Below are positions 6,793 to 32,285 of a stretch of DNA of 64,000 bases, in pieces. Below the pieces are notes generated by a model. The model was not told the DNA's origin. It searched no databases and was given only the letters and a program-made list of their open reading frames with translations. How positions within the stretch are numbered: the first letter of the stretch is position 1; each line of letters opens with the position of its first letter. The stretch comes from Fimbriosthenelais zetlandica (lineage: Eukaryota), in contig OZ365113.1 in NCBI GenBank assembly GCA_977030845.1, forward strand, positions 20,832,001-20,896,000, given 5' to 3'. The position numbers were made by a program, and so were the translations under genes.

Positions 6793-6884
6793 AAGAGAAA
6801 GAGAGTCAGAGAGGGGAGTGAGGGGGGAGGGAGCGAGGGGGAGGGAGCGAGAGAGGGAGAGAGAGAGAGAGAGAGTGAGGGGAA
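6793..6884. repeat. GA/G-rich polypurine simple repeat
   Basis: Near-pure purine tract containing (GA)n and G runs. Confidence 0.9.
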
Positions 6885-9800: not shown

Positions 9801-10799
9801 TTCATTGCATGTATTTTTAAACGACATGAACATTGCTGGTTGCAATCATCAGCAATTAACAACTTTGAGTAATAGGAGTTGCACTTGATGAATCGATACA
9901 AATCCTATGAAGAAGGTTTTATACCGGGTATATATCCCTGACATCAAAGCCGTTAGCTAAATACATTCCCCACACCCATTGTCAAGAGGCAAGGGGAGAA
10001 ACTCGCAGAAGCAGAGGTTTTCTGTACTCCAGCAATGGTGCAAGTACACCTTCCATATAGAATTGCCCACATAATAGCATCACACCATACTCTTAATAGA
10101 GAGGCACCATGCAGCAAGGCCCAATCAATGAAGCTTCGACGAAGAGCGAGCATTCTATTATAGAAAAGAATCTAATTCAATTAAGTTATATTTTGCTCCC
10201 CATCAATTTCATGCACGAGAGCGCGCCATAATAGACAAGGGCCGAGTGGTAGGCCCTTAAAGAGGATGGGAAATTAATTTACTAATAGCGTTATAGCCCA
10301 GTATCTAATTAGTAGGAAAAGTTAATTATTTTTCCTCCAAGTTCTGCTTAAAAGGAAGGTCTGGAGCTGTGGCGCTACCATCCTGCCTAATGAATAGATT
10401 ATTCATAGAACATAACTAACTGAAAGTTGTTTTTCGGTCGGAGTGAGAATGAATTTTCCAAGTTGCGTCTGCAATATTCTATTTATAGATCCAACCTATA
10501 TGGTTAATATGTGAAGCTATCAGCCAACCAAAGGTCGTAATACGTGGTCAGAAAAAAGTGATATATGGACATGTAACAGTTCGCCAGAAGTCTATAGACA
10601 CTCAGACAGACATAGAAATATATATTACAAAAGAGATCAACAAAATGTGTAATTAATATCTCCCTCACAGTAAGAAATAAATGAGAAACCTGAGGACAAA
10701 GGAAGACGAGATGGCCCTCAACTATAACGACATTTTAAACCTGAAATAATGACTTTTTAATCCTGAAAATCCTGTCTACTAATTTTGAAATTATATAAG

Positions 10800-10917
10800 A
10801 TATTGGAAAACTACATTTTGTTAAGACTTTAATTGATCGGCGATTATAGGGGGTTTTAAAAAGGTAGTTTCATTTTTAAGGACATTTAAGTTTTTTTTAT
10901 GACTCGCGGGAAGCCTG
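10800..10917 (+). mobile_element. Possible 3' fragment of a CAGGGTTC-ended non-autonomous DNA element
   Basis: Ends ...ttttaaggacatttaag...gcgggaagcctg, resembling the right end (tttaaggac...gaaccctg) of the 46205-46430 element. No left TIR found; left boundary approximate. Confidence 0.35.
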
Positions 10918-12278
10918 TATGGAGGGATCAAGCGAGGGCTAGGTTTGACAATTATTCTCCACTCTAGCAGAATAATAAGACGACAGGCTATACATTATAA
11001 ATTAGCTGGGGGAGAACAAAGACTGCCTTCTCCTCTCGTGGAGCACGCTAATTGCCATTCAGTGGTGGACAGTTTGGAAACTGGCTAAATAAGAGCGGGG
11101 AATGAGGCGAGGTGGAGAGGTGGGTGGATGGTTGAGTGGGGTAGGTGGGAGATAAGTGACATCTATAGAGGACTAGAGGAGAGGCCTGTCTCTCCTGACA
11201 ACCTCTTGTCTGATTAACTCGAGGAAAAAGAGAAAAACAAAATAGGAAAAACATCCGAATGGACCAAATAGAGGTCTATTCTTGGCTACAGCTGAAGGTG
11301 AATTAACGGGAGGGCTTCACCAATATTATTCCATCAAGAGGTCTTCGCTTCTCCTTGCTCTTTTAGATGTAACAGATGGAATGAGTGGGTTACCAAAGCA
11401 AATGACCAATTTCGTTGGGATATCAGTGGAACAGTAGAAGACAAAGAAGAAAACGAAGACGAGGAATGGAAGGCGAAGAAGAGGAAGAAGATCTATGATG
11501 CCCAAACAAGATATGAAAAGAAAAAATGGAAGATATTACAGAGCAGCAAGCAAGCACAGGAGCCGGCAGCAGAAAAGTACATGACACAAAAACCCAGTGT
11601 CTTCCATAGAAAACAAAATCCCGAGGAAGAAAGTCAATCTAATACCCTTGCAGGTGCAGGGAGAAGAGGTGGTTTGCATGAAAAGAAAGGCCGCGGCAGA
11701 GATTAGGTGAAGGCCTGGAACACGCTCCCCGCACACAGAAACAGTATCCAAATCACATCAGGGAGAGCCTGGAGATTATCGCTGGATTTTCACCCAGGAT
11801 TAACACACCAAGTGGGTCTTATCAATTATGGCGGAAAACATCCATAACCAAGCCCTCGTCTTCCTCCCCCAGGCGCTCAGCCTGCCGCCACAGTTCCAGG
11901 ACCTTCTCTCTTTCTCTGTCTCTCCTCTCCCAATAATTAGATTCCAACTAGTTTTTCTTCCCATTTTATTCTCTCCCTCAAGCTTTTCAACTGGGATGGT
12001 GAAGTATTTTTTTGTTTATTTTTTGCAGGGAGACTCGCATCAAATGGACCAATTTTGTTATGATGAAGTGATTATTAGTGTGCATTGTAAAACACGGGTA
12101 TCATTAATGAGCTTCAAAAAGTAACCTGCAGGGAGGGAAATAGATTCTTGCTGTCCTATTTATTGTGAGTTAAGGATGGTTTTTTTACGCAATATGAATG
12201 TGACTACTCATTAAGAATATGTCACTTAGTAATTACCGCAAGATGTGCTCATTAACAAGGTTACTTATATATCTAACC

Positions 12279-12518
12279 AGAATCTTTGGACACTTTTCCT
12301 ATATTACTCAAATCATTCCTGAGAAAATTAATACTTTCATTAAACTACTTACATCAGTCCTGAAAAATTTAGTGCTTTCCTTAAACTACTTACGCGTCCT
12401 GTGAAAATTAGCACTTTTCTTAAACTATTTATATGAGTGCTGAGAAAATCAGCACTTTCCTTATACTACTTATATCAGTCCTGCGAAAATTAACACTTTT
12501 TCTATACTACTTCCCTTT
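12279..12518. repeat. Diverged ~41-bp minisatellite, 5 clear copies plus 1 degenerate copy
   Basis: Units start at 12318, 12359, 12398, 12439 and 12480; consensus approx. cctgagaaaattagcactttccttaaactacttatatcagt. Confidence 0.85.
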
Positions 12519-13294
12519 AAAATACAGATTAAGATATGTGAAAATTTCATTGAAGAATGCTCAAAGGTGTCTTCCTGTATCATAGTGGCGCTGGTGTTGC
12601 TATGTATAAACAAGATAAGCATTCAGTGGAGCATGTGATGGGTCAATATTGCCACAAGGAAGTCCACTCATGGCAGGTCCTCACCCGTTTTAAAGCCGCG
12701 GATGATGGATGGAGTGATGGGTAGAGGTGAATGATGGATAGGTTAGAAAATGTATTTTCCAAGTTAACTCCTCCACCTTGGGCAATCACAGGGCTATTTC
12801 TGACCAGGCAATCATAGGCTTTCTCTTCGAAGTAGGGAAGGGGGACTCAAAATCCACATCTCAGATGAGAGAAGGGAGTTCATAGGTAAATGTGGATCGG
12901 TCAAGTATAACTACATTTGGTACTGGGATGTATTGATTTCAATACCGCAATTCAATGCCAGGCCCAGAGGCACCACACTGCCCCCTATTGGATTTTAGCA
13001 GAGCTCATGATGGGAGATGATATAAGGCAGTTGCTTCCACCTAGTGTGGCCTCAAGCAACTATAGTAAACTGAATGGGTGACTGCTGTCCACATCTCGTG
13101 GCCATCCAGGGAACTAAACACCCCATAGAATTGCAATATTGAAGGAATCATTTTTCATGTAATGAAGGACAAATATCACAGGAATGATATTTCAACTGGA
13201 CTAGATATAGAACAGGTTCCTTATATAATTGAGAATATAAGAAGAAGACGAGAAAAGGAAAGGATGGTAAGTAAAGGAATGCAACTGCCATAAC

Positions 13295-13385
13295 CAAATA
13301 CCAGAGGGCAGCAGTGGTCGCAGTACAGAGCGCTGCCATGATGAAACGCCAGAGGGCAGCAGTGATCGCAGTGCAGAGCTGCAGC
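13295..13385 (+). promoter_or_regulatory. 48-bp tandem duplication, each copy carrying a CTCF-like motif (CCAGAGGGCAGCAG)
   Basis: ccagagggcagcagtg(g/a)tcgcagt(a/g)cagagc occurs at 13301 and 13349. The duplication is directly visible; CTCF binding is inferred from motif resemblance. Confidence 0.45.
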
Positions 13386-15496
13386 AGCTCTTCAGTTACT
13401 CATTTGTCAAGTTTCAAAAGTTTGTTATTACACCATTTGAGATTAATAACTTATAGGATAAAAGTAGAATCTAAACGATAGAACTTATTTTTAAATCTAG
13501 TTTAACCGAATTGGTAAGTCTAACTGCAACCTTTCAAGCCTTTCAACCAGTGCCTTTCAAGAGTTGAAATCCAATGTTTCAGCGATAAATAGCTCAAATA
13601 CTAATGAGTGGAAGCAAAGGACATTCTGGGCGAGTCTAATTATCACAGTAATTGAAACTAAATCATGGTCTTTGTGAAGTTAGAGACTAATGGATTCCAG
13701 TGACAAGAATACCAATGAAGGATTTTGTCCAAAACTTCAATGATGCAATATATGTGATGAATGGGTGGTAGATATGCAAAGTCAAAAGACGATTTAGGCT
13801 ACTTCATCAACAATTAATAGTGGCCAAACCTACTCCGGGACTTCCTGAGCTCAGTTAACTTAAAGCACCAACAAAGCCACTCTAAGCCTGATACCCTTAA
13901 TAGGATGGTAATATTCAAAGAATGTCGTCAATATCACCAATGTAGTCAATATCACCAATGCTAATTCCATTACGCAGCTGGAGATTCAATGTGAATTCTG
14001 TTCGCGATAGAAACTCTAACGAATCCAAGTATTGCATTATGTCTGATTTCAATGGCAATGAATCAAAGGAATGATTATTGTATCAATTTTGTTGAAAGAG
14101 TATTAGATTAATTGATCATTTCAATCGAGAATGTCCTCCTGGTATTTCGAAGGATTATCGATGGGGATTTATCGATAGCTGAGGAGCTGCTTGGAGATAT
14201 TAAAAGCATTTGTTACTTAACCAGCCTTAATATCGACAATGTAATAAGTTCTCTCTCTTCTCCAAAGGCAGAATCTGAGGAGGCCTGTCTTTGATAAGAA
14301 GAAATCAAAAGGTTGTATCCATGGCTCTTTAGAGACACAAGAATCCTTCATGGTCATATCTCACAAACTAGTCTCATGACAGCGTTCCTCTTCCCTTTCT
14401 AAAGTTTTGAAACTTATCTTATCTACCTCGTTTGAATCAAGTGAATTGAATAGAGAAAAAGATTAAATGTAAACTTTGAAAAAAAAATCATCGAGAGAAG
14501 CATTCTATTCACCATTTGTATTAAAAAATACATATAGAAATACATATAAAAATACATATAAAAATACAAACATATTAGATATGTAAAGGATGTGATGCAA
14601 AATGTGGATAAAGTGAAATATAGTTGGGGCAGTGGTCAGGGGTGGGTATGGGGGTGTGGTGGGTGGAGTGGGGTGAGACAAGGTAGAATGTCTGTGTGGA
14701 GAAGTATAGCGAGGAGATAATTGATGGGGACATGAGCAAATGGTGGTGACTTGTATAAAACATAACAGTCATCAGACAAGCGTCAGTCAGCATTACATCC
14801 AGCCACTCGCCTATATATGCCGGGGCCAATTCTTCGCCACCCATTCTCCTTCACTCTTCATGTCTATTGAATAACATGGCATTAGTGCTCCTTAGACCAT
14901 AGAATCTACAGCAGGCCTCTGTGAAAAACCCTCATCTGTAATCTATTATATATAATGTATGCCTAAATATAATCATTTCGTATAATGTAAATATACATAA
15001 TACTATGCTTAGATAAAACTAAGCTTTCATTGTTCTTGGCAGATGAACACTGAACCACAAAGCTACAAAAGATAAAAGAGACACTCACAGCCATTAATGT
15101 TTGAAAAGCCTTAAGTGATTTTTTCTTTCTCGTCCCACAACTAAGGTTACAGGAGATTGGCAGCTTTGGCGGGCGTGATGATTCTGAGGTTTTAGTCAGT
15201 GATGATGGAGTATGGGGAGGTACGCGGGGTGCCACCAGAAGCTTTCTCTTCCTTTCCTCAGACAAAAAAAAATGTCACCGCCCTGAAAATGTCACTTAGC
15301 GGTCACTCCTCCATCATCGGACATACATTAACATGGCAGAGTGAGGATGGATGGTGTGTGCAAACGTCACGGACATGGCACTTATGACACAAATTATAGA
15401 CATTTTAGCCACCAATTACTCGGTTTCTTTTGTAATATATATTACCCATGAGCTAGATCTTCAAAGCCAATAACAGTTGAGTAGTCATGTAGACTA

Positions 15497-15661
15497 CCGG
15501 GTTCCCAGAAATTCGTGAAAACAGAATTCCCTGAGTTTTCCCTGATTTTTTTTGCCCGAGTAAGCCCATAAATTCCCCGATTTTTCCAGTTTTTCTCAAA
15601 TTCCCTGATTTTTCCCTGTTTGAAAAAAATGAAACTCGTTTTCCAGTCACCGGGAACCCTG
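15497..15661. mobile_element. 165-bp MITE with C(A/C)GGGTTCCC TIRs and 5-bp TSD (hAT-like or unclassified)
   Basis: Left end ccgggttccc, right end gggaaccctg; GACTA on both flanks (15492-15496, 15662-15666); internal ttccctga repeats. Confidence 0.75.
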
Positions 15662-18600
15662 GACTAGTTCTACCGCCAGCATTGAATATATACAGGACGA
15701 AAATACTAGTCTCTTCAATGGCCTTTTTCAAAAAACAGCTTGCATATCGTGTTCACATGCAATGGCTGGTGGAGCTAAGTGGGGAGTGGGGAAACAACAT
15801 GATCTGCCAGCTGTGTGGCCCACATCAAGCTTCACACCATGTGCGGGAGGTCAGGAGTTAAACATCCGGCCAAGGAGCTATTAATAGACTAAGAGCAGCT
15901 CACGGAGACGTCTGTCACGCAATTCCCCAGTCTTTCATTAGCTACGGTTGCGGCTATTAAAAGCCTATCTGTAAAATCAGGTTGTAGGCCGGGTGCAACA
16001 GGTATTTTTCAAAAATCAATTCCTGCGTCAGTATGGAATTTTGATCGTATATAGAATCAGGAATGAAGTTATTTTAATTATGGCAATTCATGCAGATAAA
16101 ACCGTTTACATCCAGTCTTTTACATGTTGGGTAAAACATGGACGATTGGAATAGTTACTTAATAGCCATACCAAATGATTATGTCAACAGTCGATCCACA
16201 TTATTATTCACTTTTTCAGTTTGTTTGCTCCCTTCTGTGCACGGATGTTTAAAAGCATTTGTTGGAATACAAAAACTAATGACCACACCGAGACAAGAAC
16301 AACTATATACACTTCATGAGGGAAAAATATTGTTCTTCCTCTTGCCGAGTATATGGAAACGATTTCATTTTGCAAGCTCCAAGTATGATGACTGTTCAGG
16401 TTTCATCTACACCATTTCCACTTTACATGAATTTCCTTTCAGGGATGAAAAATGCAGAGAGAGAGATTCAGTGATTTCTCAGAGGATCTCCGTCTGTCGA
16501 AGCCTTATATGTGGAGGTCGTCAAGCCACTTAAGGACATACACGACTCAGCTTTATTAGCAGACGGCGAGAGAACTCTTAAAAGTGACAAATGATGTACA
16601 CACAATACATCTTAGAGGATTCCCTCGATGCGATCCGCTTTAATTAACTTTGGCTATAAGTAAAAATTAACCCATTTTGTCAGAAAAGTTGCTGAGTCGG
16701 CGAAAGTCGAACTTAGTATGTATGACTTGGCAGATGACGAGTCTGAAGGGAGAGACGTTTCATGCCAAAAGGTCAGATGGCAGAATGTTATGAGCGTTGC
16801 GTGAGATGGCAGACAATGTATATATATAATATACATGTATTCTAATCAAATGCCAGAAAATCTCTGTTATACCTAGACAGGCATATGATCACATATAAAT
16901 GTGAGTTGGCCTTAACATTAGAGTCTGTGATATCTTATATGTCCCTGTCCGACAGCAATGGAAAATATCTTGTGATTAAGCATTAATAGTATGGCAACGG
17001 TAAGTAATGGATAGTTTCCACAAAGAAGTGTCCAAATCCATAACAAATGGCAAATAGGATTTCCATGCACTCTAAACTGAATTAAACTGATTAAATTGAT
17101 AGCATAAGTGAAATTAGGGGAAATAATTAGGAAGGTGTATAGTTGAAATTTCAACCATTTGTTTTTCCCATTTAAGATCTGACCAAACAGCTTTTCAATT
17201 TTAAGCAGACCCTAAAGGAAATATCACTTATGAGTTCATATTGAGGCAGTCAATGAACAGAAATTTCAGCCACGATCTGTGTATCAGATTCAATATTTAA
17301 AACCAGGCAAAGAACTCCCCAGATAAGCTCAGATGCATTCAAATTGGCGACAAATATTTGCTCTTGCTTATGAAAGAATGTATTTCACCACTGGCTTCAT
17401 TGAGTTTTCAAAAAGGCCTGTCAGCTTGTACCCAGGTCCCAGACAGCAATCACTTAGGTGCTAATCATCTGCACTTTATTCCATAACAGTGCATGCGGCT
17501 TGAAAAAGCAATAAAATATGGCGACAAGTGCGATGGCTTCCCAGCTAAGTGCCTCAAGTAACCATGCCCAGTCACTGTGTGCAGTGAGCACAAATACCAA
17601 TATTGAAACGACAAGGTGAGATGTCCCAACAACTGATCCAGTAATAGTACCTGTATATACAAACAGGTGGCAGTCTTGGTCTAGACTGATAGGTTCTGAT
17701 AAGCAATGGCTTGACTGATCCACTGAATGCTGATTCTTATCAGACTGAGCAATGAAAATGCATACAATAGCCAAATCAATTTACAATTGACACAACCAGA
17801 CTCAGGGAAATAAATTTAAAGGATTCAAGAATGCGGAGATGTAACAATGATCATAAGGTAGTTGAAGCTGTGAAAAAGTCTTGAACCTTCTGAAATGAAA
17901 ATCATGAGGGTGGGCGTCTGGGGGACAAATAAGGAAGCAGCCACACAATCAGATGAAAAACAGGTGAAGAAGAGAGCCTGATTGTGTGACCAGAACTTCA
18001 GACATGAAATGCCTTGCTCAGTGATTTCAGACAGAACAGCTGTCTTCAAATCTGCTGGATCGGCCAAAGGATAATGAAATTATGTTGCAAATCCTCCTGA
18101 ATCTCACCTAATGATCTAAATAAATGGTTGTTTCAATGCTCAGGTGGGCGGAGAATTGTTCTCAATTAGATGTGTCCATTAGTGGCTTCAGGCTCAATCT
18201 AAGGCCATTCAAAAGTGACTGTCTCCACCAAAGTAGGGCGACCTGGTTGTGCTCAGCATCATCAAATCAAAGGTAATTGCATCAAGTCTGACCTATACGA
18301 AAACTGTCTGTAAAGAAGAGGGAAAATACAGGGCGAAAACATGGCATCTTGAAACTAACTGTCATTTCTTCCTGATATTTTAAATATACAAATGTATGTA
18401 TATTGTGATCTGTTTGTAAGCAAACAAAATAAATAGTTTCTCGCTGGAGAGGCTCGATTTGGAAGACAATCTTGCTTTCTTCATGTGATCCAAAAACGAC
18501 TATTATTTGTAATTTCAGTGGGGATGCAGTGAGGCTAAGAGTTTGCACAAACAGGAGGCGATTACTGTTGCAGTTGGGTGGGGACCTGAAGCCACATATC

Positions 18601-19530
18601 CGCCTCCTTTCAAAGTGGCTTCAAGCATGGCTTCCATTGTGTTTCCTTCCGGCCCCTCACACTGTGAGCCCCCTACTACCAGGGGCTTCCGACTTTACTC
18701 AGGAGGGGGACATTCAGTCCACAAATACAAGCAACCAACTCCATCCACTCATACAAAAATCACTAGCTCCTCATCTTCAATAATGACTTTTATCAACGTA
18801 TCTATTATAATGGTCCCAGGCTAACACAATAGAAGCAGCTCCTTATTCAAGTCCTATATAGGCATGACCTTTGCTCCTTTACATAAGATGCCATAAAGAA
18901 GAAACATGCACTGAAGCTCTACTGGATATATTTCCAACATCTATCCAACTCTTCCCAGTAAAGTGGAAATAAGACATTTCCATAACGTCGCTATATGAAA
19001 GCAAGTCATTCATGATTTTGCTCATTCCCATGAGGTATCAGGAGAAACATAAAAACTTCAAGACTACGAAGGATCTATCAATTAGCCGTTGCTACGCCAA
19101 TTTCTGGCAATCCCTCACTGCAACAATTCTGCTAATAAGGATGGGGATACATTTTTGAACGTTCACTGTCTGCCATCAAAATCTCTTGGTACTAATTATG
19201 TGGCTGGCCATGCTCCCATAGATGCAACAATTAGGCATAGTTCATACTGGGAAAAGTGAACGGTACTCCTTTAAGACTTTCTTATAATGTGCTATATGTT
19301 AGCAAGAGAGCATTGCGTCTTCAAGTACTGAAAACACACGGGTTATAGCATGTACAAGATGATGGCCACAGAAGACCAGCAAACGAGTCCTTCGGAGATT
19401 ATTAGGACTTTTCAAAGAATGCTATGTCACGCATGGAAATGTCAATTTATATTTAGCATGGTATTTTATTCTCAACTGGAGAATAATCATAAAAATTGTT
19501 CTTTTACTTGACAGGTAGATCGAGACTTAC

Positions 19531-19604
19531 CTGTATACCATCAAGAATAGTTCAGAAAGGTGACCACTTACCTGTAAAAAAAAAAAAGAGAGTATATAAG
19601 TCAG
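19531..19604 (-). promoter_or_regulatory. Candidate recursive splice site with 41-nt cryptic RS-exon (19571-19531)
   Basis: Minus strand: CTGAC branch motif (19604-19600), ctctc plus T12 tract, ACAG|GTAAGT at 19572/19571, then a second CAG|GTAAGT donor at 19531/19530. Confidence 0.6.
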
Positions 19605-21027
19605 AATTCTTCATCCAAACTATAACAGATTTCATTTAAAAAAAGATCGGTAAGAAGAAACTCGGGAAGGAATTTCTTTCTCGATCTAGATAAAGTATAT
19701 ATGTACCACACGCTTCTCTTGGGCCTCTGGGGGATATTTGACCTTCGATGACACTGAATGACCTGGTTTGTCCAAACTTGGATTGGATTAGACCTTGTCC
19801 CATTGAAGATTGTTGTAAAGGTCAAGTGGTTACATGAGGGTGCAGTGTCTGGGGAAGGGGACTGGGAAAATGTGGTCCAAGAGGTGGGATATAATGTATT
19901 ATGCACGTCTGACTATAGGGTCAGTATAGAAGTAACATGGGGCCCAATGGTCATGGCTAGAATCATTGACACCTTGGTGTTTGTAGGACAATATGAATGG
20001 CCATGTGACAGTGCGGAAACCTGTTATTAAAGTTAAGGAAAACGGGTGGACAGTCATGCACAGAGCATGAACAACAACTGTTTAATAAATATTAAAATGA
20101 TAAATGTACATAATTGCTCTTATATTTTATATTTATAGGACAACCAGAAAAAAACATTCTTACAATGGTATCGGTTAATGTTAAGTTGCCCTGTTCAATT
20201 AAAAAACACAACAAAATGTCATAGCCCTGAACATTTAAATGAAGATTCTGGGATTATTGCAAAAATCTCCAATAACTCATGAAAGATGATTCAATGAACA
20301 CTTTTTCTTGTAGTATTACTTTTCTAACTTCCATTTGCAGATACGTGAAAACCGATGTGCTTTTACAGGAACATCCCAAAGGATATTTGTCCAGAGAGAA
20401 GCAAGGTAAAAGATACATAATATATCAGTAAGTCGGGCTTGTATAGGAATATATATAAGGCTATTTTGATGGATGTTTCGTTCCCATTTAGTCACACCTA
20501 AGGCGATCCTGGTGGGATGACACATAACTAGAGCGGAAGTAAGCCGGTCACCAGGCTCTGAGATGTGATTTAATATTTATAGCCAGGTATAAGACGGGCT
20601 GATTTTAAGCTATGGCCCAAGTCTTATTATACACTTATAATATATCTATAACCTAATATAGGCTCTTGCAACTAAGAGTTATCATATATTCAGTCCTCAA
20701 GTTATAATTACTTCAAATCAATTTGGTTTAGAAATCTTTTCATATTAAGAAACCAAAAATATCCCTCTTGGAAATCTAAAATATTGTAAAGGTGGCTTAA
20801 GTTGATATATTAATTGATGTGATGGTTATGTTTTTAATAATTGCGCGCCCATGGACCTTTAGGGTGGAAAAAAAGGCGGAGTGCATGGTGGAATGGAATG
20901 GAATGAGTCATGTATTCAGATACAAGTCTTTTCTTTGGCATATTATTCAGGCTGCATTGTATTTGAATCACATCCAAGGGGCCAAGGCAACAATTAAGAA
21001 GTGGTCTTTTTTGCCAGCCTGCATGTC

Positions 21028-21100
21028 CACCAGCCAATCAGAGGGCGGTGAGGGGTCACATGGGATATTGTAGCCAATAAAAAGGTCAGGGCTCACAGGT
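21028..21100 (+). promoter_or_regulatory. Promoter- or enhancer-like motif cluster
   Basis: Two AGCCAAT boxes about 40 bp apart, a GGGCGG between them and an AGGTCAgGGCTCA DR1-like pair. Motif evidence only. Confidence 0.25.
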
Positions 21101-21999
21101 CCCCTCCTGACTTGTCCATCAGCAAGTGGACAGGCAAAGCATCATAAAAACGGTGAACAAAAACAGAAAAATATCCACATCTGATCTAAATAAGGGAAAG
21201 CAATATTATGTCAACTCTGTATTTTACATGGCTTTTATACAGATTTAGCTTGATGGTGTGCTGAAAATTTCATTTTAAAGTACCAAGGTTATTGGGACTG
21301 AAATCCACCCAACATGTGCACCTTTGAAGTGCATGCCACACACATTGCACTCACACACACCTTGGGGAAGGCAGGTGGTGGCATTACGCATACAGCTTTT
21401 TTTTTGTACAGGGCAATCAAAATCTGAAAAAGAGACACCTTGAAGTGGTAGAGATAAAGAGGCCTCAGAAGAATAAAATATCTGAGGAAGAAGACAGAAC
21501 ACCCAAGACAAAGTCAACCGCCTCACTCTAAGTGCCTAAAGTATAAGGGCGGTGGAGCTCATTTTCAAAGTTGTATGGATTTAAGTAACAGATTAGGATT
21601 TCTCATGATTAAGATGGAAACGGCCCATGGTTTTAAATGACAGATGGCTGAGTAGAATTTTCTTTAATCATCTGGCTGGGAGGGGGGAAATCCATCTCCC
21701 ACGTGTATATTTATTAAATACGTACTGCCGTCCACAGCTCAGAGTATTTTCCTTATTCTCTATCATTTCCCTGACTCCATACATTGTAATATTAATATTA
21801 CAATGAGAGGCATGATAGAGGGGATGGTTTCCTCTTCGAATCGTTCATGAAAAAATAATAGCATAATCCACACTCAACATGGTAATGACCTAGGTTGAAA
21901 AATACCTATTTTTACTCCAGTTTCAACTAGAATCAGGCAATCCCACCATACATGGCCATTCATGGTCACAAAGGTCCATAGCTTGTCGTGAAGCTCATC

Positions 22000-22268
22000 T
22001 GATACTTATCCTCGTAAAATCTACAATTTCCGTTTTTTGTGGATTAATTTGGGGTGGTATTTAGATAACCGGAGCCAATAAAAGTATATTAGAAAGTGAA
22101 AATCAAATATCAGATACAGGCAATTATGTATATTTGATACTTATCCTCGTAAAATCTACAATTTCCTTTTTTTGCGGTTTAATTTGGGGTGATATTTAGA
22201 TACCGGGGGCCAATAAAAGTATATTAGAAAGTGAAAAACAAATATCAGATACAGTCAATTATGTACAT
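22000..22268. repeat. 135-bp tandem duplication (2 copies, highly similar)
   Basis: tgatacttatcctcgtaaaatctacaatttcc...aaatatcagatacag(g/t)caattatgta starts at 22000 and at 22135. Confidence 0.95.
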
Positions 22269-22293
22269 AAAAACACTTCAGGGATAGAAGATA

Positions 22294-22369
22294 TAGTCCA
22301 GACGCCTGACCTGGGATGTATACCCGATGGCAATGGCCTCAGACATATCTGGCCAGGCTGTCTAGACCA
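22294..22369. repeat. Short imperfect inverted-repeat element
   Basis: tagtccagacgcctgacc (22294-22311) pairs imperfectly with ggccaggctgtctagacca (22351-22369). Confidence 0.4.
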
Positions 22370-25093
22370 AGCGAGGAAAGGCATTGTGACTGTGACAGAA
22401 GAATGTGACAATAGCAGTCAGGAATTTTAATTTACATGTACATGGACAGCAGTTTGCCGAGCCAATATGACATGTATATTGGTGATATATGATGGGCTGT
22501 TTTATAGACTTCATTATCATCACATTTTGGAGACTCAAAAATCAGGGCAAACAAGCGTCACATGGACGGGAGACTTCTGATGATGACAATGAACACAAAG
22601 CAAGGCTAGAAACAACACATGCTTGGATCCCATCCAACATCATCCCACAAAGTCAAGGGTAAATAGTAGTAGGCTGCCAAACATGTACAGATAACATTGG
22701 CAATAATATATAAAACCTATAATGCCGATAGAAAAATGAAAAATGTAACATCCCAGTGCCCTGGAAGAAATATGTATGATTCTTAATAGGGCTTGAACCT
22801 TTAGATCGAGAAGACACTTTCGAAAGCAAAGAGAGGGATGGGGGATAGGAAGAGACGGTGAATGATGGAACATGGACAAATCCAGATGGAGAGAGAGGGG
22901 GGGGGGGGAGGGGGAGGGGGAGGGCCAACCACCTTTGTCAATCAGACCTTCCTTGCATCACGTCAACTTGTTTACTCTGACCTAACAGTAGCTGCTATCA
23001 GTTCGCCCACTATACAATATCAGCTGTCCAATTCAAGATATATTATTACGGCGTATCACTATCATCCGCCAAATATCTATATCCATATAATGAACAAAAT
23101 GCACAAATATCAAATTACATGGCAAGCTTATTATATGGCAACTACAAAGTATGAATTTACTTTGCCCTTTACCTTTCCTGACCGTTTTTTTCCATTTTTT
23201 TCATTTTGAAAAAAAATAGACAGAAAATACTCAAGAAAATAAAACAATTTTTCCAGGAACATGACCGAGTTTGTGAAAGCGATCTAAGTAAGGTAAGCCA
23301 TTGACGGTCATGCTATATGTACCTGAACTCAGGTGATCAATGGCTGAAATTGTAGCTTCAGAAGTTTGTGATGAAAGTCAGTCTGAAATGAAATCTGAGC
23401 CGTCATATATCTCAGAGCGTTTTTATGTTGTCTGTAATCTATACTGCAGGCCATGATCCTGCGCACACAATGATCAGCTGGCAGGAAGGGTTTGATATTA
23501 CCATTGACAGTATAGGCCAGCACATGCATCAAGCTTTTTCCTGCATTCACAAGATGTAAACAGCTCCAAATATACCCTTAAAGGCTTTGATTTCTAAAAT
23601 ATTTTCCAACATTTAATTGAAAACTAGACCACCTCCAGACAAACAAGTATTTAGGTTACATGCGCAGAATAGAAATTGAAAGAATTGAATGAATGCAATA
23701 TCAGAATTCCTATCTGTAATATAAGCCCTTCACAGCGACTTCCCGGGAGGCCTGGATTTCAGAGGCATTTCCATATACTACAGACGTCAGTGTAGCCTGA
23801 ATAGATGCAGCATTTCCACATACTACTCACTTTCAGTAAACAGGAACATAACTCTCAGTACTGCATATGACTCCATCATGCTGTCTGGCATAACAGGTTA
23901 TATGTCAATGCACTCTTTATGTGACTTTCAGAAACTAATATCACCAGTTATGTGAATAAACAGAATAATCAAACTGGAAGCAAAACAAACAATAATGAAA
24001 AAAGTAAGAGGGGAGTGGAGACACCTTGAGGAACTTCATTAATGCAGACTATTTGAGTAGTGATCGGATATAACATGACATGTTTGATAAATGTCACTCC
24101 AGTAATTGTATCCACACCCATGGACAATAATTGAACAGATTGCTTCTATAATTAATTCAATTTCACAGGTGGTCGTAATCTGCCTGGCTTTTTGGAGGCC
24201 TATTAGGCCACTGAACGACATGGCAAAAGTGAAAGACTATGATTTGTGATGTAGCCATGAGAAAGTATATCTGATATATTGGGATATTACTAGGGAAATG
24301 TTCTTAGGGCCAATGGTGAAGTTCAATTCATTTTACAATCCCGATTTCACTCACCCAATACCATTACTCCACCTTTGAGTACTTCTACGATGCATTAATC
24401 AAGGGATACTTCAGAAAAGTCCATTAATTAAACTTCTGTCTTAAGCGTTTGATTTGTTAGCCGACACCATGATAACAAGCACTAGACACATGATCTTCAA
24501 GAAACTACATCTATCATTTTTATTATTTATACCTCTCCCTCTAGCTTATATAAAGATTAGACTGCCTTTCAATGAAAAGACTTTGATAAGGCAAGTAAAA
24601 GGATCTGTTATCAGTAAGATAGTAAAGAGTGGCTCTTTCATACCTGGATTAGACCTCCTATCACATAATATCACATAGAATACACAGAAGACTAGATACA
24701 AGCTCCCATTACGCCATGACATTGTGATCATCCATCCCAGGCCTTTATGTGCATTATCTTTTTCCTGGTAAAGAGTTCTTCTATCAAAACTAACGTTAAT
24801 ATTCCTTGCTAAAACATCATTCGTATACTTTTTCGATGGACCCTTTCATTTTAAAATCTGGGAGAGTGAGGCAAAAACATGGAGTGATAACTTTTCAATG
24901 GAGGCACAATGCATGGGAAATGAATCAGGCTTGAGACATGTTAGTGCTAGTTGGGCATTCAGGTTTATGCGTAAAAGATGAATATTATTATTCACATAGC
25001 GTTTGAATCGGGCCGGGGGTATTTGAGAAGTTTGAGTAGGTTTAATATTTCTTGGTTTTAGTAGGTGTTTAATATCTCAAGGTTCCTCTGTTA

Positions 25094-25300
25094 GGGCCCA
25101 TCTCCACTGCTGCGATATTGCTAGCGACACTACTGCGACAAAGGTGATGCTTGTGTCGCAATGAAAAAAAAATCCACTTGAGGATGGCCATAAGGTCTTG
25201 GTCACCTCAACTACAATTTTTAAATTTCATTGCAAGACAAACATTGATCAGTTGTCGCAGTAGTGTCGCTAGTAAAATCGCAGCAGTGGAGAAGGAGACC
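25094..25300. mobile_element. Foldback MITE, PIF/Harbinger-like
   Basis: 41-bp inverted repeats at 25101-25141 and 25252-25292 with 2 mismatches, plus an inner IR (ttgtgtcgcaatgaaa / tttcattgcaagacaa). Left end TTA|GGGCCC; right terminus degenerate. Confidence 0.75.
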
Positions 25301-27752
25301 TCGTCATAAAGCTAGTCTTCATGCAGGTAATAGTAGTAGTAGCACTAACTCGCTTAGGTTGCGTTTCACTGCTATATTTATAGAGATGCGTGGTAACATG
25401 AGACATCTCCGACCCACTGGATACTTTAGGTGTCACCCCAAGTCGACGAGCAAAATAGAATATTAATATTCCTCCATGCCACACTCTGTGTACTTGAGGC
25501 TTTGGATGACACAATCTGAGTGTGGGGGACTGTGTATGAGGGGTAGGATGGGGTCGATAAGCCACTTGGAACCTTTCATACCTTCCTGATTTGGGACTTT
25601 TCTATAGAGCTTTGGAGTTAGGTAGATAGAATCAGGATGGGTGGGCTTCTTCAATATAAGGTCTAGCATGAATGGATTCTATATGAGAATAATAAAATTC
25701 TAGACTTATCTGTCAATGATGGGGGAAAAAGAGAGACTGGGAGATGAAAGGTTGGTGCGTGGAAAGCTAACACTGAGATGAACAAAGGGCGAGGCTGTCA
25801 AACCGTGAGGAGCATACATGAGAGACTTTGGTACTAATCGTCACCATGCATTATGCAGATCTCGCTCTGTCATATTTGCAGGTTGACACTGATATCAGAA
25901 TCGGTCCATTATTTGTATGGCCCACGCACACAGTGGGAAAGAAAGGAGCTTCAATTTCTATTACAGAATTTCCCTGCTGTTTTGTTCTATCATCTATTGC
26001 TGTGGGAGCAGTTTGTGCTTGAATTTTGAATACAAAAATACTTCTTTTTCCCATTGAAGAAATCCATTTGACTTGATATTTCCCTGAAAACACATACACG
26101 CTTATGGCAACTTCGAAATGTTTCAGAAATAAGTTCTGCTTTTTCGAGGCAGCTTTCCCGTTGATTAAGCACCCATATGCTTGAGCAAATTTAATCTTCT
26201 TTCAGCTGAAAGGAAAATGACCACAGGAAAAGCTGCTGCCAATGAAAGGTTTCTGCAGCAAGGAAAAACAAGTTTTATCTTTAGAAAACTCAAGGTTTGA
26301 TCGCGATAATGCACTTGGCTGGACAAACCAAAAGAAGACAAACAAAGAAACGATCGTCAAATACTTAATTAGATTACAAATTCCAAAAGATGATCATCCA
26401 ATTTAAATCAAACAGCTTTTATGAAGCAGGAAAAAGCTCATAGTTCTACCAGTACATTTAAGAGTGGGAATTACCTGGTTTAATGGAATCTGGAAAGCTA
26501 TAAGTCCTAATGAAAAACAAGGAAATCACTTCCATTCCAAGTCACTAAAGCCGAAAATTAGAAGACTATATATACGTATTCAGACGATATCCCAGACCAA
26601 GCTAAATCATATGTCTATCCAGAATATGCAATATTGTCCTCCTGAATTTATACCAGATAATATTCCCGAACACAGTACCAAGCAAAAGCTGTCAATTCAT
26701 TCCCGAGGAACGCTTGAGCAATTTCAGAATGGTCCTTCCCACCTCCTAACTCATTGACTGCGGGGTGACTTTTATTAAATGAAGTGAGAGAGACGTGTTG
26801 CGTCAAAAAGCGAATCAAAAACCACATGGAGGGTCTTAAGGCAGCAGCAGGAGAGACGAGTGAGACAAAGTAGCTCATGAACTGTAAAGACCTTTATGAC
26901 CTGCAAATAGGATAGATGCGAGGCGCTCCTAGCCAGGTCTGTGAGCTGCTCAGCTGGCCCCACAAAGCTATAAACATGGCCGATCTCTACACAGATCACC
27001 ACACTCAACACATTAAGCCACAGGTAGTACTGATTGAAAATCTACTTAATGGAATTGGGCGTGGGTGGATCGGGGGCAGGCAGGCAGCAGGAGGGAGACG
27101 CAGGATAATCTAAATATATGAAGACTGTGATTTTGGCTGGCGCTAGTATAGTCACTTAGCCACTGGGTACACTGGTTTAACTGCAAGTGTAGTGCTCACA
27201 GAGACTGTCCATAAAAGACGGTTCAAAGGAGGGTACATGCAAACAAAAGGATATATATGAGTCCAGTTACCATACCAGAATGACAATCAGTGCCGAGAAT
27301 AACAATCATTTTCTCCGCCAGAGTAATATAAATGCCATAACCGACCTTTATATAGGCATATATATATATCCTGATCAACACATCGTGTGCTCCAGTTACT
27401 CTTTCACGATGATCTGATTTTCATGTGAACACCATCTTTCCATTGTTATTCTTCAATGGCATAAACCCAGATAGCAATTAATTTCTATACCAAATCAAAT
27501 TAAAATAGAGCAACTTCAGAGAGGAACCGATCACTGACATCCAGATAAAAGACATCATTTTTAATTTTTACACGTCATTCATTGTACTACTTTGCGTTGT
27601 ATATATGCCCATGCAATTAACTGGCAGTGGCTATCTATCTTCTATTCGTTGATATGAGCAGTTACTAATGTATCCCAAAGTCTGTTTGAGTTAGTGAGGA
27701 GGATGTGAGTGAAATAACTCGGTCCTAAGATAGCTCTGTCCACATGCAGTCA

Positions 27753-28050
27753 CACTCTAAAACTCTGGCGGCATTCAGCGGTCAATTTCTTTTTATAACT
27801 GGTCATATTCCAGTTATTCCTGGCAAGAATCAGCACATGTCGGATGCGTTTTGTGTCGCCATCAATCGGCGGTCACTGCCAGTAATATCTGGTCAAAGTC
27901 GTCCTTATGCGGTCAATGACAGGAGTAGCCATCATAATACGGTCATTGGCTATTTTTCCCTGGCAAGAATCAGCACATGCTGGATGCATATTGCATCGCC
28001 ATCAATCGGCGGTCACTACCAGTAATATCTGGTCAAAGTTTTCCATATGC
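27753..28050 (+). repeat. Left subterminal region: 8 YGGTCA motifs and a 140-bp-period duplication
   Basis: YGGTCA at 27779, 27800, 27870, 27890, 27910, 27940, 28010 and 28030; 27819-27910 repeated at 27959-28050. Confidence 0.9.
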
Positions 28051-28072
28051 GTGGGGTACCAAATGGCAGGAG

Positions 28073-28376
28073 TAGGCCTATCCTATAAGGGCTCAAGACC
28101 TAGGCCTATTATTTTTTAATCATAGGCCCATTTTAAAAAAAAAATTAGTTCCATGATAATTTGCAATCGTAGACCAATAAAAGGTCTATTATGGGGATAA
28201 AATTAGCTTGTAGTTCTAATCTCGGAGGGACGGGATTGCTTTCTTGGCGGGAATTTTTGTCACGTGGGAAGGCGCCATCTTTGTTTTCGTCGCCATCTTG
28301 GATATCTGGTACATAAACAACAGAGAGAGAGAGACAGACCAAAGGAAGGAAGAGAAGATTTTACACCATTTACGCG
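28073..28376 (+). promoter_or_regulatory. Putative element promoter and non-coding first exon
   Basis: TAGGCCTA palindromes (28073, 28101), CACGTG, two CGCCATCTTG (YY1-like) motifs, donor GCG|gtaatt at 28377, and a downstream acceptor ctttctctag at 28952. Confidence 0.4.
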
Positions 28377-28507
28377 GTAATTCCTTTATTTTCTGACATT
28401 ATGATGTTGCTTGACAATCACATTATAACAATGTGATAAATAGAATATCAGATCTGCTTCCAAAACATCACTGTTAGCACCTTGAGCCCGACCGATCGCT
28501 CCCTCGC

Positions 28508-28533
28508 TAATTCATTCATTCATTCATTCATTC
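28508..28533. repeat. (TTCA)n microsatellite
   Basis: aattcattcattcattcattcattcg. Confidence 0.85.
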
Positions 28534-29028
28534 GACATCATTATCGTACGTGCTCTCTGAGACTTAGGCTTAGCTTTTAATATAGTAGGGTGGAAGCACG
28601 AAAAGACACAGGTATTGGTAATTCAAGTCCCAATCATGTGAAAGAACATAGATCTATATGATATAATTATGTTTAGGCCTTTCTAATTTTAATATGGAAG
28701 AAAATCTCCCCCACACCCATTGCCCATGGGCCATGCGGTAAGACCACTGCCGGCTCCTGCTGGAGTGAAGGCGGCAGGGGAAATAGGCCTACCGAGTCTG
28801 AGCGGTCTCAGGCTACATCCTAGTAAAGGCCTATTATTACGATAGAGATTATCAGATAGACCTGCAATTAGCTTATAGGCATACTAGCCAATAATACTGG
28901 GATAGAATATATCTTTTTTAATATTATTAATATTCATTTTAACTTTCTCTAGGCGACCTGCAACATTAACGAATCCGTCGTCGGCTACCAGTTTATGACA
29001 TTACTTATATATCTGATAAGACATCAAA

Positions 29029-32017
29029 ATGTCAGAGGCCGGGACTCCCGATACCCGGTAAGTAATAAGTAAATTTCATGTATTGATTTTTAAGTTTCAT
29101 GGCAGTGGAAAAGTCGTTAAGATTATGGAACCTGTGTATAAACATTGTGGTACAGTCTAAAATCAAAAGGAATTTCAAACAATTATGGGCCAATAGTTAA
29201 AACGCTCTTCTTGAACACTCGCTCGACATCTTAATTTGATTTTCCCGGTCTTAACAAAATAGTCTGTATTATAATTAAATGTATTACAGGCCTCGTGTTG
29301 CACTTAAGTGCCATATCTGCAACACAGTCTTCTATGGAAATGGGACATATACCAAGCATGTTTCATACCATGGCCATGAAGTGGGATACAATTTCCCATG
29401 CCCATATCCCAACTGTGGGAAGCCTCACAACACCTACTCTGGTCTGCATACCCACGTCTATCGTTTTCATCCAGAGCCAAAAGACAACCAACTGAGACCC
29501 ATTGATCCATCAGATGCCACCTGTGATAGAAAGTTCAAGTGTCCAATTGATTTTTGTGGTTTAGAATTAAAGTCAGCAAAAGAATTTTTACTCCACATTC
29601 AATTCCACATTAAGGAAGGTCGCATTATGAGATGTCCCTTCAAAATTTGTAATGGAAAGGAATTTAGAAATTCGTCAACATTTAAGAGCCATGTCTCCAG
29701 ACAACATTCCCATTATGTGACTCAAGATTTTGAGCATCACAGCCTTGTCCATCCTGTGCCTACCAACAGTGATCAAAAAGTGACAGAGGACACAAATATA
29801 TTACATGATGATATAACCATGCCAAGGTCGGCCAACTTTGATGTTGGTGATTATCATGTTGCCGATGGCGGTACTGATGACACTGAATGTGTTGTGACTG
29901 ATGATCAACTAGCCTTACATATGGCCATGTCGTACATGAAGGCCGAAGGTAAACTTCTTGTCCCTGTATCAACTCTCCAGAGATTTATTGTAGATACAAC
30001 TGAATGTGTAAAGTTGGGGAACGAACAACTTGCAGTGACTATCCTTCGAATCACTAAAGATATACCAATGGATGATATCTCGCGTCAAAATCTACATGAT
30101 GCTTTGAAAAAGGGAAATAAAGTGTCACACCTTAATGACAAGCTCTTCAGTACAGACAAACTCAGGAAAAGACATTACCGTGAAAAGTTCAATTATGTGC
30201 CACCATTACAGCTTACAATTGGATCCAATGAAAATAGAGAACCTTGTCATGTTCACATGGTGCCTGTGAAAGACACTTTGCAAGTTGTATGTAAGAATCC
30301 ATCTTTTAAAAAATTGGCAAACACTCATGTCAACTCTTCAGGCTACCTTTCAGATGTGACAGATGGTGAAGTGTTCCGAAAGAAACATTCTGGAAGTACT
30401 GCTCCAGACTGCCTACATTTAATGTTGTACCAAGATTCGTTTGAGGTAGCGAACCCACTGGGTTCAGCAAGGACAAAGCATAAAATATATGCAGTGTATT
30501 TCAATATCTTAAATATTCCTCCAGAGCATCGTTCAACAATTGACAATCTCCAACTTGCCATACTTTGCAAAGAGGTCCATGTGAAGAGACTCGGCATAAA
30601 GACTGTGCTAAGGCCATTGATAGATGACCTCAAGGAGTTGGAAAACGATGGAATTACCATAGATGGGAAGAGATACAAGGTTTGCATTTGTTGTGTATCT
30701 GGTGATAATCTTGGCTCTCACCAAATTGGAGGTTATATTGAAAGTTTTAGCCATGGTTATGTGTGTCGATATTGTGATGTCAGACGTGAGGACTTCCTAC
30801 TAAATCATGAATTGATTGGCACGAGAAGAACTAAAGAGGAATATGACACTGACCTGGAAACTATAGAAAGAGAGCAGTGTGGCTGGTCAAGAGGTGTGAA
30901 AGAAGACTCCATATTAAATGAACTTGAAACTTTCCATGTCTGTGACCCTGGGCTTCCACCTTGTCTTGCTCATGATCTCTTTGAGGGTGTGGTAAACCAA
31001 GATGTATTTCTGATCATTGAAAATTTCGTTAAAAAGAAGAAGTATATTACATTTGAACAAATCAATCGAGAGATCAACCAATTTAAGTACAAAGGACAAG
31101 ATGCACATACCACCCCTGTAAATGTGAATGAGAGAGGTCGGAAGTTGGGAGGTCAAGCTCTACAGAACTTTGCTTTCTTGCGGTTTATGCCTTTTTTCTT
31201 ATTTGACAAAGTGCAGGATGAGAATGATGAAGTGTGGCTCATGTTGAACATGCTTCATGAGATAACTTTGATTGTGATGGCCCCTACAATTGCTGAAGGC
31301 CAACTTGGATATCTGTATCGTCTGGTACACCACTACCTGTCACTCAGAGTGAACCTGTTCCCTGAAACTCCTATCAAGCCAAAACATCATTACATGCTGC
31401 ATTATCCCGAACTGATTCATCAATTTGGCCCTCTTCCAAGGGTTTGGACCATGAGGTTTGAGTCCAAGCACTCTTATTTTAAGAATGTTGCACGAGGCAT
31501 AAAGAACTTCAAGAACCTGACGTCATCTTTAAGTAGCAAACACCAGCTACTGCAGGCACTAATACAAAGTGGAAAAATGTTCAGTAATGACCAAGTTGCT
31601 ACAGGTGAACGTATGTATCATGCCAGACATTTTTCGGAGCAAATGTCAAGTGCTATAGCCCAGGCTATCCCACAGTCACCAGAATGCCCTATAACCATAG
31701 TGGAAAGGGTGGAGTATAAGGGGATAACATACACAACTTCTTCCTGTGTTGTGTTGGCTGTTGAATTTGATGAAATCTCGCAGGTGGGAGAAATCATATG
31801 TCTGCTTAATGCAGGTAGCCAGTGTTACATTGTAGTCGAGATCCACAGTGTAAAGCCTTGTAAACCAACAATGCTTTTGAAATTGAACCCTTGCATACTA
31901 GGACTTGTCTGCTTCCAAATAGCAGAACTTAAAGAGCCTTGGCCCCTTCAGATGTATAGCATCGGCAATGACTCGTATCTGACTATGAAACATGTACCAC
32001 CACTTGTTGAAAATTAA
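29029..32017 (+). CDS. EnSpm/CACTA DDE transposase with four N-terminal C2H2 zinc fingers; join(29029-29057,29290-32017), 918 aa
   Basis: 912-codon ORF with LYQDSFEVANPLGS (D1), VSGDNLGSH (D2), CRYC, HDLFEG, HHYMLHY and WTMRFESKH (E). C2H2 fingers start at CHIC, CPYPNC, CPIDFC and CPFKIC. Upstream exon caaaATG...CG|gtaagt is phase-matched to acceptor tacag|G at 29290. Confidence 0.92.
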
Positions 32018-32285
32018 TATGATCAGTGGTATGCCATGAACTAAGAATGACTTGAAAATTGATATAATCAGTAGTGTGCCATGAACTATATGAATGACTT
32101 GCAAATTAATATGGTCAGTGATATGCCATGAACTATATGAATGACTTGAAAATTAATATGATCAGTGGTATGCCATGAACTAAGAATGACTTGAAAATTA
32201 ATATGATCAGTGGTATGCCATGAACTAAGAATGACTTGAAAATTAATATGATCAGTGATATGCCATGACCTATATGAATGACTTT
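32011..32285. repeat. Six-copy 45/47-bp tandem array overlapping the transposase stop codon
   Basis: Unit aaattaatatgatcagtggtatgccatgaacta(ag/tatg)aatgacttga; copies start at 32011, 32056, 32103, 32150, 32195 and 32240. Confidence 0.95.

What the first reader, a model, noticed from the sequence alone, without database searches (positions are those of the whole stretch)
19531..19604. Textbook recursive-splicing site with a 41-nt cryptic exon in a giant intron
Seen (minus strand): CTGAC branch motif with its A 29 nt upstream of the junction, T12 tract, ACAG|GTAAGT, and a second CAG|GTAAGT 41 nt downstream. It is the only such strong AG|GT junction I found in the window, and it lies about 20.4 kb downstream of the synaptophysin-like donor. 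Known: Drosophila ratchet points and vertebrate RS-exons have this layout in long introns, often of neuronal genes. Inferred: recursive splicing in a probable lophotrochozoan, where I am not aware of it being well documented. Inclusion of the 41-nt exon would frameshift the message.
Basis: partly seen in the sequence, partly recalled or inferred. Interest (0 to 1): 0.78.

Follow-up and report, generated by a model that had tools for sequence, protein, structure and literature searches.

The report
Recursive splice sites, synaptophysin-like giant intron
A 60-kb intron of a synaptophysin-like nerve-cell gene in an unnamed invertebrate holds two sites built like the "ratchet points" that fruit flies use to cut very long introns out in steps; it is a well-supported new example of a known mechanism, but no RNA data could be examined.

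Summary
The motif is real. On the minus strand there is CTGAC (branch A 29 nt upstream), T12, ACAG|GTAAGT at 19572|19571, then a 41-nt unit and a second CAG|GTAAGT. These are the only two CAGGTAAGT in the window.

The host intron does span it. It runs 60,383 nt, from the synaptophysin-like exon ending at 39966 to the next coding exon 20.4 kb beyond the window start.

A second site of identical build lies 24.3 kb further down the same intron, on the same strand. It has a pyrimidine tract, CAG|GTAAGT, again a 41-nt unit, then GAG|GTAAGT. The intron is thus cut into 20.4, 24.3 and 15.7 kb.

The strict motif occurs only 50 times in the 447-Mb genome, against 9 for the reversed control. Most unique copies have a donor 25-95 nt downstream (p about 1e-10). 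Same-strand pairs are enriched (P = 2e-4).

Including either 41-nt unit shifts the frame and gives an early stop.

Weak points: no RNA runs were listed, no close relative was available, and the hidden-exon donors are not weaker than the ratchet donors.

The scan has already noted many such sites on other DNA of this genome. Verdict: a probable recursive splice site and a new member of a known kind.

The parts
39966..40031 (-). Upstream coding exon of the synaptophysin-like gene. It reads ..VASG-MNLTPLKEPRGFLRCIEW, ends in phase 0 on TGG, and is followed by GTAAGT.
   Evidence: Sequence. tblastn of synaptophysin-family proteins matches it. The same phase-0 intron position is seen in Tubulanus, Tegillarca, Lingula and Capitella.
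1..39965 (-). In-window part of the 60,383-nt intron. It continues to G000:C19:20811583; the next exon (ILAIFAFATTT...) starts at genome 20811582, which is window -20418.
19600..19604 (-). Branch-point-like CTGAC, with its A at 19601, 29 nt upstream of the AG.
   Evidence: read directly
19576..19587 (-). T12 pyrimidine tract. It includes the TT at -6/-5 that is typical of fly ratchet points.
   Evidence: compared with 10.1101/006163
19572..19575 (-). Recursive acceptor ACAG; the last intron base of segment 1 is 19572.
19566..19571 (-). Ratchet donor GTAAGT. After joining to the upstream exon it reads TGG|GTAAGT, the same as the exon's native donor.
19531..19571 (-). 41-nt hidden (RS) exon. It has no stop in frame, but its length is 3n+2, so inclusion shifts the frame.
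19525..19530 (-). Donor of the hidden exon, in the context CAG|GTAAGT.

Best explanation
The site at 19572|19571 is a recursive splice site of the fly type: a ratchet point with a short hidden exon. It works together with a second site 24.3 kb downstream, at G000:C19:20827259|20827258, outside the window.

Inferred course of events:
1. RNA polymerase transcribes the 60.4-kb intron of the synaptophysin-like gene.
2. The 41-nt unit, flanked by a strong acceptor and a strong donor, is recognised as an exon.
3. The upstream exon (ending TGG at 39966) is spliced to 19571, which removes 20,394 nt.
4. That junction recreates a donor, TGG|GTAAGT. This donor is used to splice on to the second site (24,313 nt removed), and the same happens again to reach the real exon (15,676 nt removed).
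5. Both 41-nt units are left out of the mRNA.

Shown: the anatomy, the host intron, the strand, the statistics and the reading-frame consequences. Inferred: that the spliceosome uses these sites, and that the units are skipped.
For: - The motif is exact and rare. It is the only one in the window. The strict form Y10NCAGGTAAGT has 50 hits in the 447-Mb genome, against 9 for the reversed control.
- Two of those 50 hits lie in this one intron, both on the gene's sense strand. About 0.003 further hits would be expected in 60 kb of one strand.
- Both sites have a 41-nt unit followed by GTAAGT.
- Their flanks share nothing beyond the motif, and each is single-copy in the genome. They are therefore neither a duplication nor a transposon.
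- A relaxed scan of the intron finds 2 sites on the sense strand and 0 on the antisense strand. The full build is expected 0.003 times per intron.
- Homologues join ...CIEW directly to ILAIFAFATT with no residue missing, so the units are not part of the conserved mRNA. Including either one gives a stop two codons into the next exon.
- The genome-wide class behaves like RS-exons. 17 of 45 unique strict sites have GTRAGT at +25..+95, against 2 of 135 control windows (p = 5e-10). With a wider donor definition the counts are 26 of 44 against 9 of 132 (p = 3e-12). The median spacing is about 51 nt, as in flies (about 50 nt, PMC8605326).
- There are 3 same-strand pairs within 40 kb against 0.11 expected, and no opposite-strand pairs (P = 2e-4). 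The other two pairs each belong to a three-site, one-strand array.
- TT at -6/-5, the strong pyrimidine tract and the segment sizes (20.4, 24.3 and 15.7 kb) fit fly values: mean 18 kb, range 2.6-63.6 kb (10.1101/006163).
Against: - No RNA evidence of any kind was available; none was listed for the intron or the exons.
- No conservation could be shown. The nearest available orthologues are only 47-57% identical in protein. Their introns at the same position (Capitella 7.9 kb, Tubulanus 14 kb, Tegillarca 46 kb, Lingula 0.6 kb) hold no AG|GTRAGT site with even a modest pyrimidine tract.
- In flies and mammals the ratchet donor is generally stronger than the hidden-exon donor (PMC8605326). Here the ratchet donors (TGG|GTAAGT) can pair with U1 over 7 positions. 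The hidden-exon donors (CAG|GTAAGT and GAG|GTAAGTA) can pair over 9. Skipping is therefore not predicted by donor strength alone.
- Part of the genome-wide excess could be ordinary short exons that happen to begin with GTAAGT.
Confidence: 0.7

Rival explanations
1. The two 41-nt units are regulated 'poison' cassette exons. On this reading their inclusion (frameshift, early stop, mRNA decay) is the functional output that tunes synaptophysin-like expression. The GTAAGT at their 5' ends then only allows them to be removed again.
For: The hidden-exon donors are perfect consensus and pair with U1 over more positions than the ratchet donors. Inclusion gives a premature stop with three exon junctions downstream. 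Fly work shows that the stronger donor tends to win (PMC8605326).
Against: Two independent exons that both start with exactly GTAAGT, after unusually strong pyrimidine tracts, at 20-24 kb spacing in a 60-kb intron, are what recursion predicts. A poison exon needs none of this. This rival also overlaps with the main reading rather than excluding it.
Confidence: 0.15
2. The sites are chance or decayed pseudo-sites that the spliceosome does not use. The 60-kb intron is removed in one step.
For: There is no RNA evidence and no conservation evidence. The 46-kb orthologous intron of a bivalve has no such site.
Against: The full build is expected 0.003 times per intron and is seen twice, only on the sense strand. 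Two of 50 genome-wide strict hits fall in this one intron. Across the genome the class shows donor enrichment and same-strand clustering.
Confidence: 0.07
3. The units are exons of another, unannotated minus-strand transcript nested in the intron (a non-coding RNA or a transposon-derived gene), not signals of the synaptophysin-like gene.
Against: Both flanks are single-copy. Neighbouring ORFs have no Pfam match, and there is no Rfam match within 5 kb either side. Nothing explains why exons of another gene should start with GTAAGT twice.
Confidence: 0.05

Closest known systems
Drosophila intronic ratchet points with cryptic RS-exons (for example kuzbanian intron 3, with two evenly spaced ratchet points in about 50 kb; also Ubx and luna)
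   Same: Both have a fused acceptor|donor motif, (Y)n-NCAG|GTAAGT, with TT at -6/-5 and a prominent pyrimidine tract. Both have a short out-of-frame hidden exon with its own donor (about 50 nt in flies, 41 nt here). Both show several sites per long intron on the sense strand, with segments of about 16-24 kb, and the host gene here is one expected to act in neurons (10.1101/006163; PMC8605326).
   Different: The animal is not an arthropod. Use of the sites is not shown by RNA. Conservation is untested for want of a close relative. The hidden-exon donors are not weaker than the ratchet donors, unlike most fly cases (the fly gene hth is an exception).
Vertebrate RS-exons in long neuronal introns, and annotated RS-exons repressed by the exon junction complex (PMC6224609)
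   Same: The site is first defined as an exon. Splicing recreates a 5' splice site, which then competes with the exon's own donor. Inclusion would give a faulty, decay-prone mRNA.
   Different: As I recall, cryptic vertebrate RS-exons are few and mostly one per intron, in introns far longer than 60 kb. Here there are two sites at fly-like spacing, and the motif matches the fly consensus closely.
Poison cassette exons
   Same: They are short and frame-shifting, and they bring in an early stop when included.
   Different: Poison exons need no donor at their own 5' end and are usually conserved in their exonic sequence. Here only the splice signals are shared between the two units.

Membership tests
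Intronic recursive splice site (ratchet point with cryptic RS-exon) | [quoted passage not shown] | tested here: met
   T12-ACAG|GTAAGT, one of 50 strict matches in 447 Mb
Intronic recursive splice site (ratchet point with cryptic RS-exon) | TT at -6/-5 and an unusually strong pyrimidine tract (99.5% of fly ratchet points) | tested here: met
   for both sites; 39 of 44 unique strict sites genome-wide; reference values
Intronic recursive splice site (ratchet point with cryptic RS-exon) | Lies inside a long intron, on the sense strand of the host gene | tested here: met
   60,383-nt intron mapped by tblastn with homologues; 2 sense sites against 0 antisense
Intronic recursive splice site (ratchet point with cryptic RS-exon) | Short cryptic exon with its own donor just downstream (about 50 nt) | tested here: met
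   41 nt then CAG|GTAAGT; the second site also has 41 nt then GAG|GTAAGT
Intronic recursive splice site (ratchet point with cryptic RS-exon) | Cryptic exon is out of frame and absent from the conserved mRNA | tested here: met
   Frameshift and stop. Homologues join the flanking exons with no gap. Actual absence from the mRNA was not testable.
Intronic recursive splice site (ratchet point with cryptic RS-exon) | Ratchet donor stronger than the cryptic-exon donor | tested here: not met
   By U1 complementarity read: 7 paired positions (TGG|GTAAGT) against 9 (CAG|GTAAGT; GAG|GTAAGTA). This is a general tendency with known exceptions, not an absolute rule.
Intronic recursive splice site (ratchet point with cryptic RS-exon) | Removed segments within the known size range | tested here: met
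   20,394, 24,313 and 15,676 nt against the fly mean of 17,953 and range 2,596-63,580
Intronic recursive splice site (ratchet point with cryptic RS-exon) | Exon-to-ratchet junction reads, sawtooth coverage, lariats | not testable with these tools
   No sequencing run was listed for the intron or for the exons, so read laying could not be used
Intronic recursive splice site (ratchet point with cryptic RS-exon) | Motif conserved in related species | tested here: inconclusive
   Only distant orthologues were reachable (47-57% protein identity). Their introns at the same position hold no such site. No close relative was found.

The most novel reading that the evidence does not exclude
The hidden-exon donors here are at least as strong as the ratchet donors, and both hidden exons are exactly 41 nt. 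The sites may therefore work as a two-stage switch rather than only as stepping stones. At each stage the cell would choose between re-splicing (productive mRNA) and keeping a 41-nt frame-shifting exon (decay). This would give a dosage control on a synaptic-vesicle gene in a lophotrochozoan. It would also mean that fly-style recursive splicing is used genome-wide in a third animal lineage, while a bivalve with a 46-kb orthologous intron does without it.
Probability: 0.15. Interest if true: 0.7.

Novelty: new member of a known kind. Interest (0 to 1): 0.45.

Why it matters
Recursive splicing has been shown by experiment in flies and in vertebrates. The open-access full text searched here holds no report for molluscs or annelids.

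This genome offers a clean two-site example in a gene that is easy to assay and is expected to be expressed in neurons. It also offers a genome-wide set of about 40 strict sites with the same build. That would let one ask several questions. Is stepwise removal of long introns an old bilaterian habit or one gained repeatedly? Why do some lineages with equally long introns lack the sites? How is the choice between skipping and keeping the hidden exon made when the two donors are about equal?

It also matters for annotation. Gene finders may call such 41-nt units as exons and so break the reading frame.

Tried and rejected
- RNA evidence: the look-up of sequencing runs on the site and on the coding exons listed no run, so read laying was never used.
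- Genome-wide pattern of two CAGGTAAGT-type sites 20-50 nt apart without a pyrimidine tract: it is swamped by minisatellites, and the reversed control is as high (97 against 140), so it is uninformative. Among the roughly ten non-repetitive matches, two are the sites of this intron.
- Conservation: two protein searches and comparison of all 311 collected proteins with the exons found nothing closer than Capitella at 57%. I fetched the orthologous loci of Lingula, Tubulanus, Tegillarca and Capitella. The intron position is conserved, but no AG|GTRAGT site with a pyrimidine tract is present. One weak Tegillarca candidate, TTAG|GTAAGA with no downstream donor, was dismissed.
- Duplication or transposon origin of the two sites: rejected.
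- Another gene or RNA at the site: no Pfam family among ten neighbouring ORFs except a sub-threshold zinc knuckle, and no Rfam family at 14-25 kb.
- Host genes of the two other multi-site arrays (contigs C21 and C37): six long ORFs gave no Pfam match, so they remain unidentified.
- Upstream mini-exon encoding the N-terminal residues seen in homologues: not found in the window.

Full report
**Observation.**
Read on the minus strand, the stretch 19604-19525 holds, in order:
- CTGAC, with its A at 19601, 29 nt before the last intron base;
- a run of twelve T (19587-19576);
- ACAG (19575-19572), followed directly by GTAAGT (19571-19566);
- a unit of exactly 41 nt (19571-19531) that ends in CAG;
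- a second GTAAGT (19530-19525).

CAGGTAAGT occurs only twice in the 64-kb window on both strands, both times here (0.48 expected). The acceptor|donor fusion with a ten-pyrimidine tract occurs only here (0.03 expected).

**Host gene.**
- The window is G000:C19:20832001-20896000.
- The exon at 40031-39966 (minus strand) reads ..VASG-MNLTPLKEPRGFLRCIEW and ends in phase 0 before GTAAGT.
- A MARVEL search of the genome found the rest of the gene 20.8 kb beyond the window start.
- I searched the protein library with one of those exons, then ran tblastn with the hits against the window plus 30 kb of added sequence.
- This placed the next coding exon (ILAIFAFATTT...) at window -20418 to -20536, followed by three more exons within 1.5 kb.
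- Homologues run from ...EW/F straight into I/V-L/I-A-I-F-A-F-A-T-T with no residue missing.
- The intron is therefore 60,383 nt, and the site lies 20,394 nt into it, on the sense strand.
- The same phase-0 intron position is found in Tubulanus (14 kb), Tegillarca (46 kb), Lingula (0.6 kb) and Capitella (7.9 kb).
- The nearest proteins are lophotrochozoan, with Capitella best at 57%.

**A second site.**
- A genome-wide search for Y10NCAGGTAAGT gave only 50 matches in 447 Mb, against 9 for the reversed pattern.
- One further match lies in this same intron on the same strand, at G000:C19:20827253-20827272 (window about -4742).
- Read out, it is a long pyrimidine tract, CAG|GTAAGT, again a 41-nt unit ending GAG, then GTAAGT.
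- The intron is thus divided into 20,394, 24,313 and 15,676 nt.
- The two sites share nothing beyond the splice signals: local alignment score 22 against a shuffle maximum of 20.
- Each flank is single-copy in the genome, so they are neither a duplication nor a repeat family.
- A relaxed scan of the intron finds these two on the sense strand and none on the antisense strand.
- In 300 dinucleotide shuffles of the intron, the relaxed motif alone averages 0.35 matches. The motif plus a GTRAGT 25-95 nt downstream averages 0.003.

**Consequence for the message.**
Including either 41-nt unit gives a frameshift and a stop two codons into the next exon. Including both gives a stop inside the second unit. 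Neither unit can be part of the conserved protein-coding mRNA.

**The class in this genome.**
- After collapsing repeat copies, 17 of 45 strict sites have GTRAGT at +25 to +95. Control windows (antisense, upstream, further downstream) have 2 of 135 (Fisher p = 5e-10).
- With a wider donor definition the counts are 26 of 44 against 9 of 132 (p = 3e-12).
- The spacings run from 27 to 86 nt with a median of about 51 nt. This matches the "short, about 50 nt" cryptic RS-exons of flies (PMC8605326).
- 39 of 44 sites have TT at -6/-5, the mark of fly ratchet points (10.1101/006163).
- Three same-strand pairs lie within 40 kb of each other and no opposite-strand pairs do. About 0.11 of each are expected (Poisson P = 2e-4).
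- I fetched 100 kb around each of the other two pairs. Each turned out to be a three-site array on one strand, with none on the other:
  - C21 plus strand at 25394392, 25412754 and 25436322;
  - C37 minus strand at 10558273, 10533256 and 10522026.
- Their host genes could not be named.

**Interpretation.**
- The anatomy fits the fly model in which a ratchet point is first defined as a short exon. That exon is spliced to the upstream exon and then removed by use of the recreated donor (PMC8605326).
- Segment sizes fit the fly distribution: mean 18 kb, range 2.6-63.6 kb.
- The fly gene kuzbanian, with two evenly spaced ratchet points in an intron of about 50 kb, is the nearest described layout.
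- I put the probability that the spliceosome uses these sites recursively at about 0.7.

**What weakens it.**
- No RNA run was listed for the site or for the exons. Junctions, sawtooth coverage and lariats are therefore untested.
- No close relative was reachable. The distant orthologous introns, including the 46-kb one of a bivalve, hold no such site. Conservation is therefore unshown, and the sites are at best lineage-specific.
- The recreated ratchet donors read TGG|GTAAGT (seven positions able to pair with U1). The hidden-exon donors read CAG|GTAAGT and GAG|GTAAGTA (nine positions).
- In flies and mammals the ratchet donor is generally the stronger one, and the stronger donor tends to win, with exceptions such as hth. 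Skipping of the 41-nt units cannot be taken for granted. A role as poison exons is a live rival that overlaps with the main reading.

**Novelty.**
- Full-text searches found no paper that treats recursive splicing in molluscs or annelids; the only co-occurrences were incidental.
- The mechanism itself is well known, so this is a new member of a known kind.
- The scan has already noted the same kind of site many times on other DNA of this genome: 26 notes, several followed up.
- One of my 50 strict hits (C19:32920980) falls inside one of those noted stretches.
- I reached the genome-wide signal independently before reading those notes, and I do not count them as evidence.

Noticed in passing
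G000:C19:20827212-20827272 (window about -4788..-4728; L009:5212-5272), minus strand: Second recursive-type site in the same intron: pyrimidine tract, CAG|GTAAGT, a 41-nt unit, then GAG|GTAAGT. It lies outside the window, so it is not listed under parts.
   Followed up: yes
G000:C21:25394392, 25412754, 25436322 (plus strand; L067, L069, L071): Array of three ratchet-like sites on one strand, 18.4 and 23.6 kb apart, each with a donor 39-53 nt downstream. There are none on the other strand in 100 kb. The host gene was not identified.
   Followed up: partly
G000:C37:10558273, 10533256, 10522026 (minus strand; L081, L079, L078): Second array of three same-strand ratchet-like sites. The middle one is weaker (TTAG|GTGAGT, no nearby donor). 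There are none on the other strand in 100 kb. The host gene was not identified.
   Followed up: partly
L028, L053, L055, L057, L058 (C13:23758373, C38:268603, C38:1915552, C39:1931977, C39:2065660): A repeat family carries a perfect CTTTTTCTTTGCAG|GTAAGT with identical flanks and no downstream donor. Motif counts must be collapsed for such copies.
   Followed up: no
G000:C1:69934935-69935521; C29:2059442-2060284; C25:37541907-37542227; C10:55933998-55934385: Minisatellites whose 26-62 nt units each contain CAGGTAAGT. They dominate any search for paired donor motifs.
   Followed up: no
window 40020-40031, minus strand: The four codons before the ATG at 40019 are in frame and read VASG. This matches the N-termini of homologues (..EVASNMNL..), so the true start codon may lie in a further upstream exon. 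None was found within the window, which hints at another long intron.
   Followed up: partly
window 18285-18548, minus strand: An 88-aa ORF has a sub-threshold zinc-knuckle match (PF14392, E = 0.003, 17.6 bits against a cut-off of 27). It may be a decayed retroelement gag about 1 kb downstream of the site.
   Followed up: no
L064:2278-2337 (Capitella teleta KB297391.1): The public Capitella model (P0177) starts with an odd N-terminus. A proper first exon (..NMDAAKEPRGFIKFLQF) lies 7.9 kb upstream of the second exon, so that model probably misses its real first coding exon.
   Followed up: partly
L060 (Lingula anatina LFEI02000067.1): The 491-aa Lingula protein P0001 is two tandem synaptophysin-like genes fused into one model.
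   Followed up: no
G000:C29:13774033 and C35:317197 (L047, L048): Near-identical ratchet-like sites (38-nt unit) lie on a chromosome-size contig and on a 649-kb contig. This is probably an uncollapsed haplotype copy.
   Followed up: no
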